NCBI RefSeq assembly: GCF_006345805.1
Contig: NW_021827551.1
Coordinates: 1-37,353, forward strand
DNA: 37,353 nt
Direction: 5' to 3'
Source: Octopus sinensis
Lineage: Eukaryota
A program made the translations under genes and the position numbers. Below the pieces are notes generated by a model, which was not told where the DNA came from, made no database searches, and was given only the letters and a program-made list of their open reading frames with translations. Below are positions 1 to 35,223 of the stretch, piece by piece. The number at the start of each line of letters is the position of its first letter. Positions within the stretch are counted from its first letter, which is position 1.

Positions 1-540
1 AGCACTGTCAGGGCTGTCAATAGATGTGAGACATTGCATGGCATCTAGGAACCCCAAAGCTACATTGCTATGTAGTCAATTAACCTGCACGAAATAGCAG
101 CCAAATCCACAGAAAATCTAATGGAATTACATTGGATATTGTTATAGGGTATAGATTTACAAATGAAAAACAATGGCTATTCATGAATCTCATAATAAAC
201 TATATGAATTTATTAAATAACGATTGCAGCGGAGAGGCAACAGCAACACAACCTTTTCTTATTGCTACTATTACTAATATTACTAATAATTGTGGTACAA
301 ATAATAATTACTACAGCAAAAACGAAATGAGCAGCGACAGAAATATTGCCCTTGAGATGCAACAAGCGGAGGTTTTTCTTTGAGTGTGTCATCACCCAAA
401 ACATTGCAGTCAAAGGGATCGAATATAAAATAATTACATTTAACTTCCTAGAATTTTTAATTAAAATCATGGTACTCCGTTCGATTCCTGAAGAAATACG
501 TTCCGAGTTGGTCAAAATTAAAAAGAAAAACGACTGGCCA

Positions 541-1176
541 CACCGCAAAAACTTCGAATACCGCTACTCCTTGTGGTCTCCCCATACAAAAGAAACATCT
601 GGAATATTGCATGACCCCAGAGGGCACTAACTAAACGAATTTAAGCCATGATTGATCTCGGTTTTTGGGAACGCCTTAAAGCCTTGAAACTCTACTCTGT
701 CGAGCGCCGCTGCGAGCGGTCCATCATTTGAACAATGTGGAGAAAATACCGGCACCATTGCCCAAACGACCTGAACATTAGCTTCAAGGTTCATCCAAGG
801 CTGGGACCACGGGACATATGTCCCCTGCCCAAATCAGGATCACAACATATAGGTACAGTGCGTGCGACACAATATCTTTTCCTCAACAGGCCCTGCCCTG
901 TTTAACATTGTCCCAAAACAGATCAAAGAGGAAAAGGATCCCATCACCTTTAGACGGAGTCTGGACAAATTTCTTCAAGGAATACCAGATAGGCCACTCA
1001 TACTTCGATGCAGCTCACTCAACCAGAAGTCACTATTTCAATGGACCATAAATAAAACTTGACTTAAAAAGGATTTAGATAATCCTATCAGGTGTTGCTA
1101 TTAAGTTAGACATGGCCTGGACTAATCTTTGGTCGAAACATATGTAAGTTTTATCTAGGTTTTCTAAGTTTTTATC
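541..1176 (+). mobile_element. 5'-truncated, decayed CR1-group LINE: ORF2 C-terminus, 3' UTR and short tandem tail
   Basis: Manual translation across stops and frameshifts gives RKNFEYRYSLWSPH..PQRALTKRI*AMIDLGFWERLKALKLYSVERRCERSII*TMWRKY..CPNDLNISFKVHPRLG..RHNIFSSTGPALFNIVPKQIKEEKDPITFRRSLDKFLQGIPDRP. This matches CR1/L2-type post-RT motifs (LEY..PVWSPH, QRRATK, Y.ERL..L.L.SL.RRR, WN.LP). It ends in degenerate TAAGTTTTATC repeats at 1145-1176. Confidence 0.85.
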
Positions 1177-2790: not shown

Positions 2791-3297
2791 ACATTACATA
2801 TCAGACAAAAGGAGGGAATACTAGTAAGCTGAAATTCCAACATGCAAAAATGAAATATAAGAGGTACTAAATCTGTTATAGTTCTTTATAGATGACGAGT
2901 TTATTTTCAGAAAATATGCTCCGTACTCTTATGTCATATTCAGTCCCACGTTTATATTATAAATGCCGGGTGCCATCGGTAAATAGTCGCCATATTATAT
3001 TTTTTTTATTTTCGCGCGTGCTCCCTGTTTCTTTTTGGATTTGGTCGACTACACAGTAGGATCAGTAGGCCACCGTCTGAGAGAAAAATAGAACCACGAC
3101 GCACCTCACTCTGCCAGAAATTTGGAAATGACATGCTCTACTGCTTGGCATTCGCCCCGGAAGGCTGCAGTATGAACATGTATCAAAATGGACGAAAAAT
3201 GGACAAAAAGGGACCTAGAGTATGACCTATAGGTAATAGGCAGGCCGTGAGAAAGAAATAACATATACAGCTATACTGAATTATACTTAATTATAGA

Positions 3298-3891
3298 GGC
3301 GGCGAGCTGGCATAAACGTTAGCACGCCGGGCGAAATGCTTTGCGGTATTTCGTCTGCTGTTACGTTCCGAGTTCAAATTCCGACTTTGCTTTTCATCAT
3401 TTCGGGGGCTCGATAAATTAAGTACCAGTTACGCACTGGGATCAATATAATCGACTTAATCCGATTGTCTGTCCTTCTCTGTCCCTACTGTGTTTAGCCC
3501 CTTGTGGGTAGTAAAGGAATAGGTATTTCGTCTGCCGTTACGTTCTGTGTTCAAATTCTGCCGAGGTCGAATTTGCCTTTTATCCTTTTGGGGGTCGATA
3601 AATTAAGTACCAGTTACGCACTGGGGCCGATGTAATCGACTTAATACGATTGTCTGTCCTTCTCTGTCCCTACTGTGTTTAGCCCCTTGTGGGTAGTAAA
3701 GGAATAGGTATTTCGTCTGCCGTTACGTTCTGAGTTCAAATTCCGCCGGGGTCGACTTTGCCTTTAATCTTTTCGGGTGTCGATAAATTTAGTACCAGTT
3801 ACGCACAGGGGTCGATGTAATCGACTTAATCCGATTGTCTGTCCTTCTGTTTCCCCTCTGTGTTTAGACACTTTTGGGTAGTAAAGAAATA
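3298..3891 (+). mobile_element. Family-M SINE trimer: one tRNA-like head plus three bodies with tail B
   Basis: Head GGCGGCGAGCTGGCATAAACGTTAGCACGCCGGGCGAAATGC. Bodies start GGTATTTCG at 3345, 3522 and 3707. Each has a B-box-like GTTCAAATTC, a central GTCGACTTTGCCTTTCATCCTTTCGGGGTCGATAAATTAAGTACCAG block (Meta-domain-like, from memory) and a tail ending GTGGGTAGTAAAG(G/A)AATA. Candidate TSD at 3282-3294 / 3892-3904. Confidence 0.9.
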
Positions 3892-4464
3892 TATACTTAA
3901 GTATGAGGATACTGTCCATATTATTTTCCTTTTGTAGAATTAAGTTAATCTTAATTGCTAAAACTTCAGAATAACCAGAGGTAAGTTATTCCTATTGTAG
4001 CAAATATTCTTATTTTCCACTATGCCTTTTTCTATAACAAGCATAATCAAATAAGTTAATTCTTTTCAACAACCCGAACGCTGTACATAATGGATAGTAC
4101 AGACGGGAAAATAGCTTTCTTCCGAGTACAGCTTGAACATAATTTTGTCGGAAGAATAACAAATACGTCACGAATCATATTGATATTTCAATGTAATTTT
4201 AAAGACATTTTTTCTATAGGAAATCATCTTTTGGTAGCCATATTATGGAGAGTCATGTGTGACATCGTGTAATATCCGGTGTTGTTATATAAACTAAAGA
4301 CTAATCCAGTAACAGAGGAATAATGAAAAAAAGTACAAAGCAAAACAAAAAACGTTATCTATTGAAGCCTTTGAAATTTTGTTTCACTTTTATGTCTGCT
4401 GATTCGATCAAATAGGCAACAGTCACAAACTGGTCTCATTTAACCTGACGAACAGATACATAAC

Positions 4465-4969: not shown

Positions 4970-5586
4970 AAGTAAGTACAGAATCTGTTTTCAAGTAAGT
5001 ACCAAGTCAGTTTTCAAGTAAGTACAGACTCTGTCTCCATATAAGAACAGAACGTATTTTAAAGTAAGTACAGAGTCTGTTTTCAAGTGGAGAATATGTT
5101 TCCATAAAAGAACAGATTCTGTTTTCAAGTACATAATCTGTTTCCAAATAAGTACAGAGTCCGTTTTCAAGTACAGAATCTGTTTTCATGAACAGAATCT
5201 GTTTCCATATAAGGACAGAATATATTTCCAAATAAGTACAGAATCTAGTCTTAAGTAAGTAGAGACTCTGTATTCAAGTAATTACAGAATTTCTTTCAAA
5301 GTAAGTACAGAATCCGTCCTCAAGTAAATACATAATATGTTTCCAAATAAGCACAGAATCTGTGTTCAAGTAACTGCAGGGACTGTTTTCAAGTAAGTAC
5401 AGATTCTGTTACCATGTAAGTACGGAAACTGTTTTCAAGTAAGTACAGAATCTGTATTGAAGTAAGTACAAAATCTGTTTTCATTTTAGTGCGGACTATG
5501 TTTTCAAGTAAGCACAGACTTTGTTTGTAAATAAATACAAATACTGTTTTCAAGTAAGTACAGAATCTGTTTTGAAGTACAGAATC
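4970..5586. repeat. 23-bp minisatellite, consensus AAGTAAGTACAGAATCTGTTTTC
   Basis: Parsed by hand into 27 complete units (23 of 23 nt, 4 of 19 nt) plus one partial unit. Palindromic core ACAGA-A-TCTGT. Confidence 0.95.
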
Positions 5587-6294: not shown

Positions 6295-7126
6295 TGTGAG
6301 TGTGTGTGTGTGTGTGTGCATACATAGTTATATACATACATGCCTTACGTGTAACTTCTATTTATGAAAGAGTTCTCAATACTTTGAGTAGAGCAAATGT
6401 TTTTATTACGATCACGCAAGGAAAGCTTTCTCGTGATTTTAACTTTAGGGTAAATTTAGCGTCGTTAAGCAGAATTATTTTTATGTTCCACCAGCGTTTG
6501 CATGTGAATTTCCAGTTCAGATTATGAATGGTTTAGTCCCTCTAGAGGTACGTTGCAGTTTCGCATATATAGTGATGATCAGGATGATATTACTATACAT
6601 TTATTCATGCATAACTTTAATATTCGATTAATTTTACACCCAAGAAATGTGTTAATACGTCTACATCTTTAAAATATCCGATACATTTTTTTTTCTTTTT
6701 AGAATGCACTTAATCATAAATTCAATATTTTTTCTCCGGCATCTTCGCAGAGTAATTGGCGATTTTTTTTACGTAACTTTTCTACTCTGCCATTAATATC
6801 AAACCCGATGAACACTGAATATCTTTCAAAAGTGATTTGACTCAAAGCTATAACAATTTCAATATTTCCACAATTTTTATGTATCGCTTATATCCTTAGT
6901 TTAAATTATTTTATATAGCCATTAATTTTTTACTAACTTAATGCATGCTTTCTAGTGACAAACACTTTATAATAATATCTCACTATCAGTTAACTTCTCT
7001 TCTACTGATATTATTTATTGTCTTAATTTTTAAATCTCATTTTATTGCCATGCCTGCAGAAGAGTTCTTTTTTTTTTCATTTCTAGATACTCTAACTGGA
7101 ATAATTTTCAAGCAATATTTTTATTT

Positions 7127-7518
7127 CTGGTAGAATCCTTAGCACGTCGGGCGAAATGTTTAGCGATATTTCGTCTGTCTCTGCGCTCTGAGTTCAAATT
7201 CCGCCGGGGTCGTCTTTGCCTTTCATCATTTCGGGGTCGATAAATTAAGTACCAGTTATACACTTTTGTCGATATAATCGAATTCATCCGTGTGTCTGTC
7301 CCTGTTTGTCCTCTCTGTGTTTAGCCCATTGTGGTTAGTAACGAAATAGGTATTTCGTCTGTCTTTACGTCCTGATTTCAAATTGCACCGACACATTGCG
7401 TTTCGTTCTTTCAAGGCCGAATAAATTAAGTACCAGTTGCGTACTAGGATCGATCTAATCGACGGGACTTCTTCCCCCAAAAGTTTAGGGCTTTGTTCGT
7501 AGAACAGAAAATAATATT
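7127..7518 (+). mobile_element. Family-M SINE heterodimer 1: head, tail-B body, tail-A body
   Basis: Junction CGAAATA|GGTATTTCG at 7349. The second body ends in a different tail (..CCCCCAAAAGTTTAGGGCTTTGTTCGTAGAACAGAAAATAATATT). Confidence 0.85.
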
Positions 7519-7528
7519 ATGATTATAT

Positions 7529-7895
7529 AAGGCGGTAAGCTGGCAGGATCGTTAGCACGTCGGGTGAAATGCTGAGCGGTATTTGAGTTCAAATTCCGCC
7601 GAGCTCGACTTTGCCTTTCATCCTTTCGGGGTCGATAAATTAAGTACTAGTTACGCACTGGAGCCGATGTAATAGACTTAATCCTTTTGTTTGTCCTTGT
7701 TTCTTCCCTCTGTGTTTAGCTCCTTGTGGGTAGTAAAGAAATAGGTATTTCGTCTGTTGTTACGTTCTCAGTTCAAATTTCGACTAAACTTTGCGCTTCA
7801 TACATTCAGGGTCGATTAAATTAAGCAACAGTTGTGTACTGACATCGGTCTAATCGATTGGTCCCCTCCTTGCGGCTAGAGTAGAAAATAATATT
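7529..7895 (+). mobile_element. Family-M SINE heterodimer 2
   Basis: Head AAGGCGGTAAGCTGGCAGG. Junction AAAGAAATA|GGTATTTCG at 7744. Ends ..CTAGAGTAGAAAATAATATT. Confidence 0.85.
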
Positions 7896-7902
7896 ATAAT
7901 TT

Positions 7903-8268
7903 CACGTCGGGTGAAATGCTTATCGGTATTTCGTCGGTCTTTATGTTCTGAGTCCAAATTCCGCCGAGGTCGACTTTTCCTTTCATCCTTTCGGGGTCGA
8001 TAAATTAAGTACCAGCTATGCACTGGGATCAATATAATCGACTTCATCCGTCTATCTGTCCTTGTTTATCTCCGCTGTGTTTACCCCCTTGTGGGTAGTA
8101 AAGAAATAGGTATTTCGTCGGCCTTTATGTTCTGAGTTCAACTGGCACCGAGGTCGACTTTGCCTTTCATCCTTTCGAGGTTGAGAAATTAAGTATTGGG
8201 TTACAACTAATCTCCTGGCCAAGTCCCCGAAAATTTCGCCATTTTTGCCTAGAGGAGAAAAGAATATT
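7903..8268 (+). mobile_element. Family-M SINE heterodimer 3 (head partly lost)
   Basis: Junction AAAGAAATA|GGTATTTCG at 8109. Ends ..GCCTAGAGGAGAAAAGAATATT. Confidence 0.85.
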
Positions 8269-22692: not shown

Positions 22693-23024
22693 CGTTTCAA
22701 AATACAACTTAGCTGTGTTATTTATTAATAATCCTACCCACCGTCTTAAAAATTAAATAAGGATCGGATATTTCCCTTACTTATTAGTATAGGTCTGCTC
22801 ATTCAGAGTATACATTGAGATACATAAGAGCTACTAAAATATCAGCAAAACTCTAGTTTATCACATTCATATTAATGCTGTAAGTTTGCTAGCATCTGTA
22901 AGTTTGCTATGTCTTATAAGTTTGCTATGTAGAATCTGTAAGTTTGCTATGTCTTATAAGGGACGCACAGAGTCTAAAATACTGAGATTGCCGTGAATAT
23001 TATGCATTAAATATCTTTTCTTAT

Positions 23025-23656
23025 TTCTTTATTGCCCACAGGGCGATAAATATAGAGGGGACAAACAAGGTATTAAGTCGAGCTGGCAGAAACTTTAGCG
23101 CACCATGCGAAATGCTTAGCGGTATTTCGTCTGTCGCAACGTTCTGAGTTCGAATTCGCCGAGGTCGACTTTGCCTTTCATCGTTTCGGGGTCGATAAAT
23201 TAAGTACCAGTTACGCACTGGGGTCGATGTAATCGACTTAATACCTATGTCTGTCCTTGTTTGTCCCCTCTGTGTTTAGCCCCTTGTGAGCAATAAAGAA
23301 ATAGGTATTAAGTCGATTACATCGACCCCAGTGAGTAACTGGTACCTATTTGATCGAACACGAAAGGATGAAAGGTAAAGTCGACCTCGGTAGAATGTGA
23401 GCTTAGAACGTAACGGCAGACGAAATACATATTTCTTTGCTACCCACAAGGGGCTACACACAGAGGGGACAAACAAGGACAAATAAACGGATTAAGTCGA
23501 TTATATCCACCCTAGTGCGTAACTGGTAATTTTTTAATCGGCCCCGAAAGGATGAAAGGCAAAGTCGACCTTGGCGGAATTTGAACTCAGAACGTAACGG
23601 CAGACGAAATACGGCTACGTATTTCGCCCGGCGTGCTAACGTTTCTGCCAGCTCGC
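23025..23656 (-). mobile_element. Family-M SINE dimer (head plus two tail-B bodies), interrupted by a nested copy
   Basis: Head at 23656-23612. Junction AAAGAAATA|TGTATTTCG at 23429. The second body is split at the duplicated 13-mer and its tail lies at 23068-23025. Confidence 0.85.
23082..23303 (+). mobile_element. Family-M SINE monomer (tail B) nested in opposite orientation, 13-bp TSD
   Basis: GGTATTAAGTCGA is present exactly at 23069-23081 and 23304-23316 and flanks a near-complete copy ending GCAATAAAGAAATA. Confidence 0.92.
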
Positions 23657-23801
23657 AAACTATTCAATATATTTTCTTGCTGCTGTAAACACCGAAGTTG
23701 AAAGATAATGTATAAAATTACACTGACATACACACAGTAAAATTAGTCGTACATTACTACTACAAGGCATAGTATTTCGTCAGATTATTTATGCGTATAT
23801 T

Positions 23802-29509: not shown

Positions 29510-30406
29510 TTCAAACAACCTTAGGGGAAAACAGTCTTATGTATAAATTTTATGAAATGTATACAATGTTAGAACTGCTCTGCCTGTAATATTCCAATTC
29601 AAAGGATACTCTCTATGCTTATGCAAAATACAGATCATCGCCGAGAAATATGTAGGATTGCCGCACGAAGACTAAGTCCTTTTATCGTCAAATCCAACAC
29701 GAATTACCTTGATATCAGAACCTAAACCGAAAATATTTGTTTCTATATACACATCAGTAAATGAAACAGGAACTGCTTCTACGAATATTCTTCAACGTAG
29801 AATGTAAGTTATATGCGCAATTGAAAGATCTTAAGTTTAAAATGCCAGGATTTATAATACTCATATTGTGTATGTCAACCAGGAATTTCTCTTCCTGTAT
29901 TGGAGATACTTTTGAAAAATACTCCTAGACAAAATCATGCATTTACTCAAACATGGCGTTTCGATCTTATTTGCTCTTCTAAATATAGAATGCTACAGTT
30001 ATTGTAAGTCCAGATGAAAATATATAGAACAAATTATGGTCCGGTGGATACAAAATTCACTAACACATACGGGTAGTCAAAACCGTTGCGACACTTTAAT
30101 ACAAAACCTTCCAGCCCGTGTCCGCCAAAATCCGTGGTTGCTTTGGCTGACTTAATGATACGCTTGGTGTCAAAAAGTGACTATCCATATTTCCAACCAT
30201 ACAGTACTCCGAATGGAAAAGACACGACATTGTATTCAGCGTAGACTATAATGTATTTGCTTTAGATGTGCAGTGTATGAGTAAGATTGCAAATAGAATA
30301 AATGATTGTTGTTTTCTTCCAATGCTTTATTTATTAACACTGTCAGAACGAAAGCCATATTTTCGTCTCCAGTATTTGAAATTAAAGGCCAACCAGCAGG
30401 AATAAG

Positions 30407-30951
30407 GGTTTCAAATTTTTAAACAAAATTTTGGAGAAGGGATTAGGTCTGTTATACTGACTCCAAAATGATGAATGGCAAATTCAACCTCGGTGGAATT
30501 TTGATCTCAGAACATAGCGGTTGACGAAATACCTGTTTCTTTATGATCAACAAGGAGCTAAAAACAGAGGGGACGAACAAGGACAGATAAAGGTATTAAG
30601 TCGATTACATCGACACCAGTGTGCAACTGGTACTTAATATATCGACCTCAAAATGATGAAAGGCAAAGTCGACCTTGGCTGAATTTGATCTCAGAACATA
30701 GCGGTTGACGAAATACCTGTTTCTTTACTACCCACAAGGGGCTAAACACAGAGGAGACAAACAAGGACAGACAAACGGCTTAAGTCGATTACATTGACTC
30801 CAGTGTGTAACTGGTACTTATTTAATCGACCCCCAAAAGGATGAAAGGCAAAGTCGACCTCGGCGGAATTTGAACTCAGAACGTAACGGCAGACGAAATA
30901 CCGCAAAGCATTTCGCCCGGGGTGCTAACATTTCTGTCAGCTCGCCGCCTT
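30407..30951 (-). mobile_element. Family-M SINE trimer: head, tail-B body, tail-B body, tail-A body
   Basis: GGTATT junctions at 30902, 30717 and 30533 (periods 185 and 184). The last body ends ..CTCCAAAATTTTGTTTAAAAATTTGAAACC. Confidence 0.88.
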
Positions 30952-34864: not shown

Positions 34865-35074
34865 GGCGTGATGTTAGCGATCTCGCCAGCACGCTGAACG
34901 AAATGATTAGCGGTGTTTCGCCCGTCGCTACGTTCTGAGTTCAAATTCCTACCGAGGTCGACTTTGCCTTTCATCCTTTCGGGGTCGATTAAATAAGTAC
35001 TAGTTGAAACTTGGGTCGATCTAATTGATTCATCTCCTCCCCAAAATTGCTGCCGCTGTGACAAAATTTGAAGC
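34865..35074 (+). mobile_element. Family-M SINE monomer (tail A type)
   Basis: Well-preserved body CGTTCTGAGTTCAAATTCCTACCGAGGTCGACTTTGCCTTTCATCCTTTCGGGGTCGAT. Tail CCCCAAAATTGCTGCCGCTGTGACAAAATTTGAAGC. Confidence 0.85.
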
Positions 35075-35223
35075 AAATTTATCAAAATCATCACACTGAT
35101 TTTTTTTAAAAATGTATATTTTTTTTTAAAACTGTGTAGGAGAAAATTCTTCTCAAAAGGAAGCCAAGAAAACATTTTAGAATTACAGTTAGATTTTTAG
35201 TTAGATGGGGGATTTAAGATGTT

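What the first reader, a model, noticed from the sequence alone, without database searches (positions are those of the whole stretch)
23025..23656. Self-targeting SINE: tail-B copies land at GGTATT, a motif inside their own family
Seen: a plus-strand copy (23082-23303) is inserted into a minus-strand copy with the exact 13-bp TSD GGTATTAAGTCGA, plus CGA microhomology at the 5' junction. Its 3' end therefore reads AAAGAAATA|GGTATT, the same as the tandem junctions elsewhere, but at a different site and strand (GGTATTAAG vs GGTATTTCG). Of 11 tail-B ends in the window, 8 are followed by GGTATT, 1 by TGTATT and 2 by other sequence. The usual site lies between the A-box-bearing head and the B box. 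Inference: insertion is biased to GGTATT, through a sequence-specific endonuclease or through priming by an RNA 3' end extending into GGUAUU. For same-strand events the cDNA could anneal to the homologous host, giving seamless head-body-body arrays. The new copy would gain a harmless landing site and a complete Pol III promoter, and the target would be regenerated each time. I know of no description of this behaviour for octopus SINEs, but could not search.
Basis: partly seen in the sequence, partly recalled or inferred. Interest (0 to 1): 0.85.

Follow-up and report, generated by a model that had tools for sequence, protein, structure and literature searches.

The report
Octopus SINE copies stacking in register
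An octopus short mobile element (a CORE-SINE with a particular 3' tail) repeatedly sits directly in front of the motif GGTATT inside older copies of its own family, building head-body-body arrays. The evidence favours repeated in-register insertion but comes from too few events to prove true self-targeting.

Summary
A plus-strand SINE copy (23082-23303) lies inside a minus-strand copy, flanked by the exact 13-bp duplication GGTATTAAGTCGA. Of 11 tail-B ends in the window, 8 are followed by GGTATT, 1 by TGTATT and 2 by other sequence. However, 8 of those 9 junctions are in-register tandem junctions (tail end joined to SINE position 49). Only the nested copy is a separate kind of event.

The element is the octopus CORE-SINE family, also found in O. 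vulgaris, O. sinensis and O. bimaculoides loci.

Evidence for stepwise insertion into resident copies:
- Head-proximal tail-B units are younger than distal units (array D: 1 versus 12 private substitutions).
- The distal unit can be an older tail-A type, and whole arrays share one outer target-site duplication.
- No tail-A end (0/17) is followed by GGTATT.

Evidence against a strict GGTATT-specific nuclease: four of the five clear tail-B ends outside tandem junctions land elsewhere.

Arrays are also reshaped by gene conversion or unequal exchange. An O. vulgaris insertion shows that array transcripts and template jumps occur too.

Verdict: partly supported. This is a new variant of known SINE multimerisation and SINE-derived tandem repeats. 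The genome-wide flank test could not be run.

The parts
23082..23303 (+). Nested tail-B SINE copy ('Cins'), 5'-truncated by about 9 nt. It is 6.0% from the tail-B consensus, with 4 private substitutions.
23069..23081 (.). Left copy of the 13-bp target-site duplication GGTATTAAGTCGA. Its last 3 nt (CGA) are microhomology with the SINE 5' region.
23304..23316 (.). Right copy of the 13-bp target-site duplication GGTATTAAGTCGA. It is the antisense of host SINE positions TCGACTTAATACC.
23022..23661 (-). Array C. Parts: head 23661-23614; tail-B unit 1 at 23613-23430; tail-B unit 2 at 23429-23304 plus 23068-23022, interrupted by the nested copy. The junction reads AAAGAAATA|TGTATT at 23430/23429.
23662..23677 (-). 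Outer target-site duplication of array C, 5' copy (AGAAAATATATTGAAT on the minus strand).
23006..23021 (-). Outer target-site duplication of array C, 3' copy (AGAAAAGATATTTAAT on the minus strand). It matches the 5' copy at 14 of 16 positions.
3295..3891 (+). Array A: a head plus three tail-B body units, with junctions at 3521/3522 and 3706/3707. It is flanked by TATACTTAAKTAT at 3282-3294 and 3892-3904. The units share private variants and have a mosaic identity pattern.
7117..8267 (+). Array B: three adjacent composites, each made of a head, a tail-B unit and a tail-A unit. The tail-B|GGTATT junctions are at 7348/7349, 7743/7744 and 8108/8109.
30404..30951 (-). Array D. Parts: head; young tail-B unit 1 (30902-30718); older tail-B unit 2 (30717-30534); degraded tail-A' unit 3 (30533-30404). 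It is flanked by ATTCCTGCTKGYTG at 30965-30952 and 30403-30390.
34899..35085 (+). Stand-alone copy of the same CORE-SINE with the third (A'-like) tail. Its position-49 hexamer is GGTGTT and it carries no tail-B unit. It serves as a comparison copy.

Best explanation
The repeats are copies of the tRNA-derived octopus CORE-SINE. One subfamily carries 'tail B', which ends ...GGGTAGTAAAGAAATA.

Proposed mechanism (inferred): new tail-B copies are repeatedly inserted by target-primed reverse transcription (TPRT) into resident copies of the same SINE superfamily, which may be of tail-A, tail-A' or tail-B type.
1. The primer is the nicked bottom strand ending ...AATACC-3'. The new tail therefore abuts GGTATT at SINE position 49. 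That position is the boundary between the loop and the 3' arm of a 13-bp hairpin, between the A-box-bearing head and the B box.
2. Host and cDNA are homologous, so the upstream host strand can anneal to the cDNA in register. The redundant head is then lost, leaving a seamless head-body-body array.
3. A second GGTATT exists in antisense in the TTAATACC subfamily. It received the inverted nested copy, which has an ordinary 13-bp TSD.
4. The site bias most likely comes from base pairing, not from a sequence-specific nuclease. Transcripts that read from one tail into the next unit and stop at TATTT would end in ...AAAGAAAUAGGUAUUU, and that end can pair with AATACC at a nick.
5. After formation, arrays are remodelled by gene conversion or unequal exchange.

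Shown: the structures, the TSDs, the age order of units and the tail-B specificity. Inferred: the priming mechanism and the homology-guided 5' join.
For: 1. The nested copy has an exact 13-bp TSD that begins with GGTATT, and a 5' microhomology. The chance of GGTATT at any of the five clear non-tandem ends is about 2e-3.
2. The junction is always tail end | position 49, in 4 arrays in the window and in O. vulgaris locus L006.
3. Age order. Divergence from consensus is 4.9% < 13.6% < 22.1% along array D and 7.6% < 12.1% along array C. In the three array B composites the tail-B unit is less diverged than the tail-A unit (12.5 v 15.1, 6.0 v 15.3, 9.8 v 12.8). Private substitutions are 1 v 12 for D_u1 v D_u2 (binomial p 0.003) and 7 v 16 for C_u1 v C_u2 (p 0.06). 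Units inserted in a single event should be equally old.
4. In array B the tail-A units differ from one another more (23-25%) than the tail-B units do (15-18%). The hosts are therefore older than the inserts.
5. Arrays A, C and D each have one outer TSD joining the head to the last unit (13, 16 and 14 bp). This is expected if head plus last unit were the original element.
6. Specificity: 0 of 17 tail-A ends are followed by GGTATT, against 9 of 15 tail-B ends.
7. In the window, copies whose position-49 hexamer is (G/C/T)GTATT carry a tail-B unit in 6 of 7 cases. Copies with AGCATT, GGTGTT or CATGAT carry one in 0 of 4.
8. Position 49 is the first base of the 3' arm of a predicted 13-bp hairpin.
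9. TATTT is described as a Pol III terminator in mammalian SINEs (PMC8466645).
10. In L006, a head fragment ending at 48/49 is joined to the target sequence GTCATTT, which resembles GGTATTT. An adjacent piece ends at a T3 run. Both are as expected for Pol III transcripts primed by 3'-end microhomology.
Against: - The sample is small and comes from one window that was chosen because it looked unusual. Only 4 further tail-B ends were found in about 134 kb of other octopus DNA.
- Only one GGTATT event lies outside the in-register class.
- Four of the five clear non-tandem tail-B ends are not at GGTATT.
- 'Private' substitutions could partly be unsampled subfamily variants. The tail-A consensus was built from only 11 copies from other species.
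- Heads are about twice as diverged as bodies even in monomers, so head age cannot be used.
- Identical patches show that gene conversion operates and could mimic host-derived 5' ends of units. Examples are the 44-nt patch across both junctions of array D, the 66-nt patch in array A, and private variants shared within B3.
- L006 (O. vulgaris) carries the junction at a site where O. bimaculoides has no SINE. At least some junctions are therefore copied from array transcripts rather than made by insertion into a host.
- L002 shows a tail-B copy followed out of register by a tail-A 3' fragment with no host 5' part, which suggests template switching.
- The partner LINE and the SINE RNA 3' ends are unknown.
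Confidence: 0.5

Rival explanations
1. RNA-level origin. Reverse transcriptase runs off, or stalls on, a SINE RNA at position 49. This could follow cleavage in the UAGC loop of the tRNA-like hairpin, or a block there. The enzyme then jumps to the 3' end of a second tail-B RNA. Each array would then be born in a single retrotransposition event flanked by one TSD.
For: - The outer TSDs flank whole arrays.
- The boundary 48|49 coincides with the loop/3'-arm boundary of a 13-bp hairpin.
- L006 holds pieces [90-231][49-107]AAA[1-48], with the 48|49 breakpoint used twice, at a site with no SINE in O. bimaculoides.
- L002 looks like a switch from a tail-A RNA to a tail-B RNA.
- Template switching is the accepted route to composite SINEs (PMC4824008 and PMC4758252).
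Against: - Units of one array differ significantly in age (D: 1 v 12 private substitutions).
- Distal tail-A units are degraded, with 5-8 indels. Such copies would be poor RNA templates.
- This model does not explain the antisense nested copy, whose primer was genomic DNA ending in AATACC.
- It does not explain why the far commoner tail-A RNAs never act as acceptors (0/17).
- No headless monomer starting at position 49 was seen among the SINE copies listed.
Confidence: 0.2
2. A dimeric or multimeric master. A head-body-body (or head-B-A) element arose once, is transcribed through the junction because no T4 terminator intervenes, and spreads as a unit. Arrays then grow or shrink by unequal crossing-over and gene conversion.
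For: - The consensus has no run of four T, so read-through is plausible.
- L006 is best explained as a copy of an array transcript.
- The units of array A share private variants and are equally old.
- Identity patches show exchange within arrays.
- Dimeric SINEs and SINE-derived tandem repeats are known (PMC10702118).
Against: - Arrays differ in composition: B-B-B, B-A, B-B' and B-B-A'.
- Units of one array are no closer to each other than to units elsewhere, except in array A.
- The age gradient in arrays C and D is unexplained.
- The nested antisense event is unexplained.
Confidence: 0.15
3. Coincidence plus local duplication. The nested copy landed at GGTATT by chance. The arrays are ordinary tandem duplications of a 185-bp segment and have no link to retrotransposition.
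For: - There is only one non-tandem GGTATT event.
- The 184-185 bp period and the exchange patches are typical of tandem repeats.
Against: - The same boundary (tail end | position 49) recurs at at least four separate arrays. There is no microhomology that would place a duplication there.
- Units within arrays belong to different subfamilies and tail types.
- The chance of the nested GGTATT is about 2e-3.
Confidence: 0.07

Closest known systems
Octopus CORE-SINEs (OR1/OR2 of Ohshima and Okada 1994, as cited in PMC4824008 and PMC4758252)
   Same: It has a tRNA-like head with a B box (GAGTTCAAATTCC). Its central segment (TTTGCCTTTCATCCTTTCGGGGTCGATAAATTAAGTACC) resembles the CORE domain; the likeness to the MIR core is my own recollection, seen by eye. 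It has a non-poly(A) tail of the LINE-derived kind and variable TSDs. It is present in O. vulgaris, O. sinensis and O. bimaculoides loci.
   Different: I could not compare it with the published OR1/OR2 sequences, because the 1994 paper is not in the library. The papers read here do not mention in-register arrays.
SINE-derived satellites of squamate reptiles (PMC10702118)
   Same: Both are tandem repeats of part of a SINE, with a longer terminal unit that reaches the SINE terminus. Both have a period near 150-180 bp, arise independently at many loci, and show signs of homogenisation.
   Different: Here arrays have only 2-3 units, and the units differ in age, subfamily and even tail type. The upstream unit is always tail-B. 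That pattern points to repeated retrotransposition rather than to duplication alone.
Head-to-tail SINE multimers (B2, Dip and Ves SINEs; PMC8466645) and Alu-in-Alu-tail insertion
   Same: In both cases new copies of a SINE accumulate next to or inside resident copies because the resident copy offers a favoured target. The Alu example is from my own knowledge.
   Different: Those insertions go into A-rich tails and give complete-unit tandems. Here the landing point is internal (position 49), and the product is a head shared by several headless bodies.
R2 and its internally deleted derivatives (PMC3414825)
   Same: This is a possible analogy. RNA sequence downstream of the element's 3' end pairs with the target and sets a precise 3' junction. 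Template jumps occur. (The role of downstream 28S sequence in R2 is from my own knowledge; the paper was only listed.)
   Different: R2 has a sequence-specific restriction-like endonuclease and a single rDNA target. Here most stand-alone insertions are at unrelated sites, and the partner LINE is unknown.

Membership tests
tRNA-derived CORE-SINE (octopus OR-type) | tRNA-like 5' head with internal Pol III promoter boxes | tested here: inconclusive
   A B-box match (GAGTTCAAATTCC) and A-box-like motifs in the head were seen by eye. ARAGORN calls no tRNA and Rfam gives no tRNA hit. The head folds into a long hairpin.
tRNA-derived CORE-SINE (octopus OR-type) | Conserved CORE central domain | tested here: inconclusive
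   The central 40 nt is conserved in all copies and across three Octopus species. The similarity to the MIR core was judged from memory. No reference CORE sequence was available to align.
tRNA-derived CORE-SINE (octopus OR-type) | Dispersed copies flanked by target-site duplications | tested here: met
   TSDs of 13, 13, 16 and 14 bp were found at the nested copy and at arrays A, C and D. Copies occur at unrelated loci in three species.
tRNA-derived CORE-SINE (octopus OR-type) | 3' tail shared with a partner LINE | tested here: inconclusive
   No LINE with tail A or tail B was found. The LINE remnant at window 346-1060 has an unrelated 3' UTR.
SINE-derived satellite / tandem repeat | Head-to-tail repeats of a SINE segment, with a terminal unit extending to the SINE end | tested here: met
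   Period 184-185 bp, 2.4-3.3 copies. A head is present only on the first unit.
SINE-derived satellite / tandem repeat | Units of an array derive from one another (local amplification, homogenisation) | tested here: inconclusive
   This holds for array A and for short patches. Units of arrays B, C and D are as different from each other as from copies elsewhere, and they differ in age.
Dimeric SINE amplifying as a unit (Alu-like) | The same composite found at many loci, each flanked by its own TSD, with position-specific diagnostic bases | tested here: not met
   Composition differs among the four arrays (B-B-B, B-A, B-B', B-B-A'), and there is no position-specific clustering. The sample is small.
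Site-specific non-LTR retrotransposition (R2/R4/Dong-like) | Nearly all insertions lie at one target sequence recognised by the element's endonuclease | tested here: not met
   Four of the five clear tail-B ends outside in-register junctions lie at TATACT, AGAAAA, AATATA and AGAAGC.

The most novel reading that the evidence does not exclude
This would be a self-homing SINE. Pol III transcripts that read from one tail-B into the next unit would stop at the weak terminator TATTT and so end in GGUAUUU. That 3' extension would pair with AATACC at nicks inside resident copies of the family. Arrays would then breed RNAs that extend arrays in register, an RNA-guided homing mechanism with no site-specific nuclease. 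Occasionally such an RNA would hit the antisense GGTATT of one subfamily.
Probability: 0.3. Interest if true: 0.7.

Novelty: new variant of a known kind. Interest (0 to 1): 0.5.

Why it matters
SINEs make up about 12% of the Octopus vulgaris genome (PMC13282606). How they spread and how they seed tandem repeats is poorly known outside mammals.

If tail-B copies really home in register to an internal motif of their own family, two things would follow. It would be a concrete route from dispersed SINEs to satellite-like arrays, a link so far inferred mainly from squamate data. It would also be an example of target choice set by the RNA's 3' extension rather than by the nuclease.

The claim can be tested directly with the three chromosome-scale Octopus assemblies that already exist. 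If it fails, these arrays are ordinary SINE-derived tandem repeats.

Tried and rejected
1. Fishing for more octopus DNA with a translated SINE peptide spanning the junction gave one 543-bp metagenome contig.
2. Exact 20-mer scans of JGI metagenomes, GTDB genomes and IMG/VR gave one partial copy and otherwise chance hits.
3. The rhodopsin route worked. It gave orthologous 24-kb loci from O. vulgaris, O. sinensis and O. bimaculoides, and a LINE-like gene model gave a further 60-kb O. bimaculoides locus. These held only 4 more tail-B ends.
4. The search for the partner LINE failed. The window's LINE ORF2 remnant found two proteins. The exhaustive representative search returned only short metagenome or Logan contigs of unknown origin. 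The one contig I fetched is unrelated GC-rich DNA.
5. I first read array D as a simple unequal crossover (unit 2 = 5' part of unit 3 + 3' part of unit 1). I rejected this because units 1 and 2 differ by about 14% outside a 44-nt patch.
6. I first read array B as a recent segmental triplication. I rejected this because its blocks are no closer to each other than to unrelated copies.
7. Using head divergence as an age marker was rejected. Heads are about twice as diverged as bodies even in monomers.
8. The Rfam hits (plant miRNA-precursor models, far below gathering score) are artefacts of the long inverted repeat made by the nested copies.

Full report
**What is in the window**

The window is AT-rich eukaryotic DNA (GC 0.27-0.40, many microsatellites). 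A BLAST search with the copy at 23082-23303 finds the same roughly 230-bp element at five places.

The element has three parts:
- a 48-nt head (AGGCGGCGAGCTGGCAGAAACGTTAGCACGCCGGGCGAAATGCTTAGC);
- a body that starts GGTATTTCG, carries a B-box-like GAGTTCAAATTCC, and holds a conserved core (TTTGCCTTTCATCCTTTCGGGGTCGATAAATTAAGTACC);
- one of several tails.

'Tail B' ends ...CCCTTGTGGGTAGTAAAGAAATA. 'Tail A' ends ...CCTTGTGCCTAGAGTAGAAAAGAATAT(TAT)n. A third type, A', ends ...GCCAAAATTTGAAAC....

The core resembles the CORE domain. The literature records octopus CORE-SINEs, OR1/OR2 of Ohshima and Okada 1994 (PMC4824008 and PMC4758252).

I fetched the rhodopsin loci of O. vulgaris, O. sinensis and O. 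bimaculoides and a further 60-kb O. bimaculoides locus. All carry the family, mostly as tail-A monomers. The source is therefore an Octopus genome.

**Checking the observation**

- The plus-strand copy at 23082-23303 is flanked by GGTATTAAGTCGA at 23069-23081 and 23304-23316.
- It starts at GCTGG, about 9 nt short of the full 5' end. CGA is shared between the duplication and the consensus.
- It interrupts the second unit of a minus-strand array (23661-23022).
- Of the 11 tail-B ends, 8 are followed by GGTATT, 1 by TGTATT, 1 by TATACT and 1 by AGAAAA.

GGTATT occurs at about 2.3-4.6e-4 per site and strand. One such hit among the five clear tail-B ends outside tandem junctions (three here, plus L002 and L009) has a chance of about 2e-3.

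The other seven GGTATT junctions and the TGTATT one are a single kind of junction: tail end joined to SINE position 49, with period 184-185 bp. They are not all independent.

**Anatomy of the arrays**

- Array A (3295-3891): a head plus three tail-B units.
- Array B (7117-8267): three adjacent composites, each with a head, a tail-B unit and a tail-A unit.
- Array C (23661-23022, minus strand): a head plus two tail-B units of different subfamilies (TTAATCCG versus TTAATACC).
- Array D (30951-30404, minus strand): a head, two tail-B units and a degraded tail-A' unit.

Arrays A, C and D are each flanked by one outer target-site duplication (TSD) of 13, 16 and 14 bp, with 1-2 mismatches.

In the predicted RNA fold of the head, positions 32-44 pair with 49-61 and the loop is UAGC. 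The unit boundary 48|49 is therefore exactly the boundary between the loop and the 3' arm. The junction itself (GAAATA GG TATTTC) is a 6+2+6 inverted repeat.

**Evidence for stepwise insertion into resident copies**

Units within an array differ in age, and the head-proximal unit is the youngest.

| Array | Divergence from consensus, proximal to distal |
|---|---|
| D | 4.9%, 13.6%, 22.1% (the last with 8 indels) |
| C | 7.6%, 12.1% |
| B1 | 12.5% (tail-B), 15.1% (tail-A) |
| B2 | 6.0% (tail-B), 15.3% (tail-A) |
| B3 | 9.8% (tail-B), 12.8% (tail-A) |

The tail-A units of array B also carry 5-6 indels each.

Counting only substitutions seen in no other copy gives the same order. D_u1 has 1 and D_u2 has 12 (p = 0.003). 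C_u1 has 7 and C_u2 has 16 (p = 0.06).

In array B, the tail-A units differ from one another by 23-25% and the tail-B units by 15-18%. The hosts are therefore older than the inserts.

The upstream partner of the junction is always tail B. 0 of 17 tail-A ends are followed by GGTATT, against 9 of 15 tail-B ends.

In the window, copies with (G/C/T)GTATT at position 49 carry a tail-B unit in 6 of 7 cases. The exception is the young nested copy. The four copies with AGCATT, GGTGTT or CATGAT carry none.

An old head and an old distal unit that share one TSD, with younger tail-B units between them in perfect register, is what insertion into a resident copy predicts.

Ordinary target-primed reverse transcription (TPRT) explains the seamless 5' side. 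The upstream host strand, head plus a few bases of the body, is homologous to the new cDNA. It can anneal in register and prime second-strand synthesis, and the redundant head is then lost.

**What limits this reading**

1. The arrays are also remodelled.
   - A 44-nt patch (TAAAGAAACA|GGTATTTCGTCAACC...CAAA) is identical at both junctions of array D, while the flanks differ by about 14%.
   - The last 66 nt of A_u1 and A_u2 differ at one base, while their first 110 nt differ by about 13%.
   - The two units of B3 share variants that are absent from B1 and B2.
   - Gene conversion or unequal exchange is therefore active. Shared 5' variants cannot be taken as TSDs.
2. Heads are about twice as diverged as bodies even in monomers. 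Head age is not informative.
3. In O. vulgaris locus L006, a young rearranged insertion reads [90-231][49-107]AAA[1-48]. It lies where O. bimaculoides has about 800 bp of unrelated sequence.
   - It carries the tail|GGTATT junction, yet there was no resident SINE at the site.
   - It is best read as follows. A short head transcript that ended in the TATTT run was primed at the similar target GTCATTT. A template jump then followed, to an array transcript that ended at a T3 run.
   - So array transcripts exist and are copied, and template jumps occur.
4. Contig L002 shows a tail-B copy followed, out of register, by the 3' part of a tail-A copy with no host 5' part. This also suggests template switching.
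5. The four clear tail-B ends outside tandem junctions that lack GGTATT lie at TATACT, AGAAAA, AATATA and AGAAGC. TSDs of 13, 16 and about 3 bp were identified at three of them. The partner enzyme is therefore not a GGTATT-specific nuclease.

**Most likely mechanism**

I favour in-register retrotransposition of tail-B copies into resident CORE-SINE copies, with the site set by base pairing rather than by nuclease specificity.

The feature common to the tandem and the nested junctions is a DNA primer ending ...AATACC-3'. A transcript that runs from a tail-B into the next unit and stops at TATTT would end ...AAAGAAAUAGGUAUUU and would pair with that primer. TATTT is described as a Pol III terminator in mammalian SINEs (PMC8466645).

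It is inferred, not shown. Confidence in the overall model is about 0.5.

**Rivals**
- Single-event RNA-level template jumping at position 49 (0.2).
- A multimeric master plus unequal exchange (0.15).
- Coincidence plus plain tandem duplication (0.07).

The processes probably coexist.

**Comparison with what is known**

- The structures match 'SINE-derived satellites' of squamates: tandem repeats of a SINE part with a longer terminal unit (PMC10702118).
- They also recall the abundant head-to-tail multimers of B2, Dip and Ves SINEs. For those, insertion into a resident tail versus a dimeric template remains undecided (PMC8466645).
- What differs here is the internal landing point, the shared head, the strict tail-B specificity, the mixed ages and types of units, and the antisense hit at a second copy of the motif.
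- I found no description of this for octopus SINEs in four full-text searches.
- I rate it a new variant of a known kind.

**What could not be done**

The decisive test is a genome-wide flank logo of non-tandem tail-B ends, together with orthologous monomer/dimer comparisons. It needs whole-genome access, which these tools do not give.

The partner LINE was not found.

Noticed in passing
window 346-1060 (+): A degenerate, frameshifted 3' end of a LINE ORF2 (...ERLKALKLYSVERR...GPALFNIVPKQIKEEKDPITFRRSLDKFLQGIPDRP, stop at 1060). The closest named protein is O. bimaculoides LOC106879348. Its 3' UTR is unrelated to SINE tails A and B, so it is not the partner LINE.
   Followed up: partly
window 10886, 18267, 20561, 28753 (-) and 36110 (+): A second tRNA-like SINE family with B box GGTTCCGGGTTCAGTCCC: 5 copies in the window against 0.01 expected by chance. 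The tail-B copy in L009 (36447-36673) is inserted into a member of this family.
   Followed up: partly
window 23079-23655: The nested inverted SINE copies form long inverted repeats (158 nt at 85% and 94 nt at 90% complementarity). Rfam scores them as plant miRNA-precursor-like hairpins far below the gathering score. This is an artefact, although such a locus could yield hairpin RNA if transcribed.
   Followed up: partly
window 30592-30604 (+): The same 13-mer GGTATTAAGTCGA that was duplicated at the nested insertion also occurs, unoccupied, in the antisense of array D unit 2.
   Followed up: no
L006 24000-24259 (-) versus L008 19960-20755: O. vulgaris has a 247-bp rearranged SINE insertion, [90-231][49-107]AAA[1-48]. 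At the same place O. bimaculoides has about 800 bp of unrelated sequence that includes a (GT)n run. There is no TSD. The O. sinensis locus ends exactly at the boundary, so the ancestral state is unknown.
   Followed up: partly
whole window versus L006-L009: Tail-B ends are far denser in the window (11 in 37 kb) than in the other octopus loci (4 in about 134 kb).
   Followed up: no
L009 36680-36760 (-): The 5' part of the other SINE family (CAGGTGTGGCTGTGTGG) is repeated three times in tandem just upstream of the tail-B insertion. This is another small head-region tandem.
   Followed up: no
window 4970-5579: A 23-bp tandem repeat array (about 27 copies, 69% matches) with 42- and 84-bp higher-order periods.
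   Followed up: no
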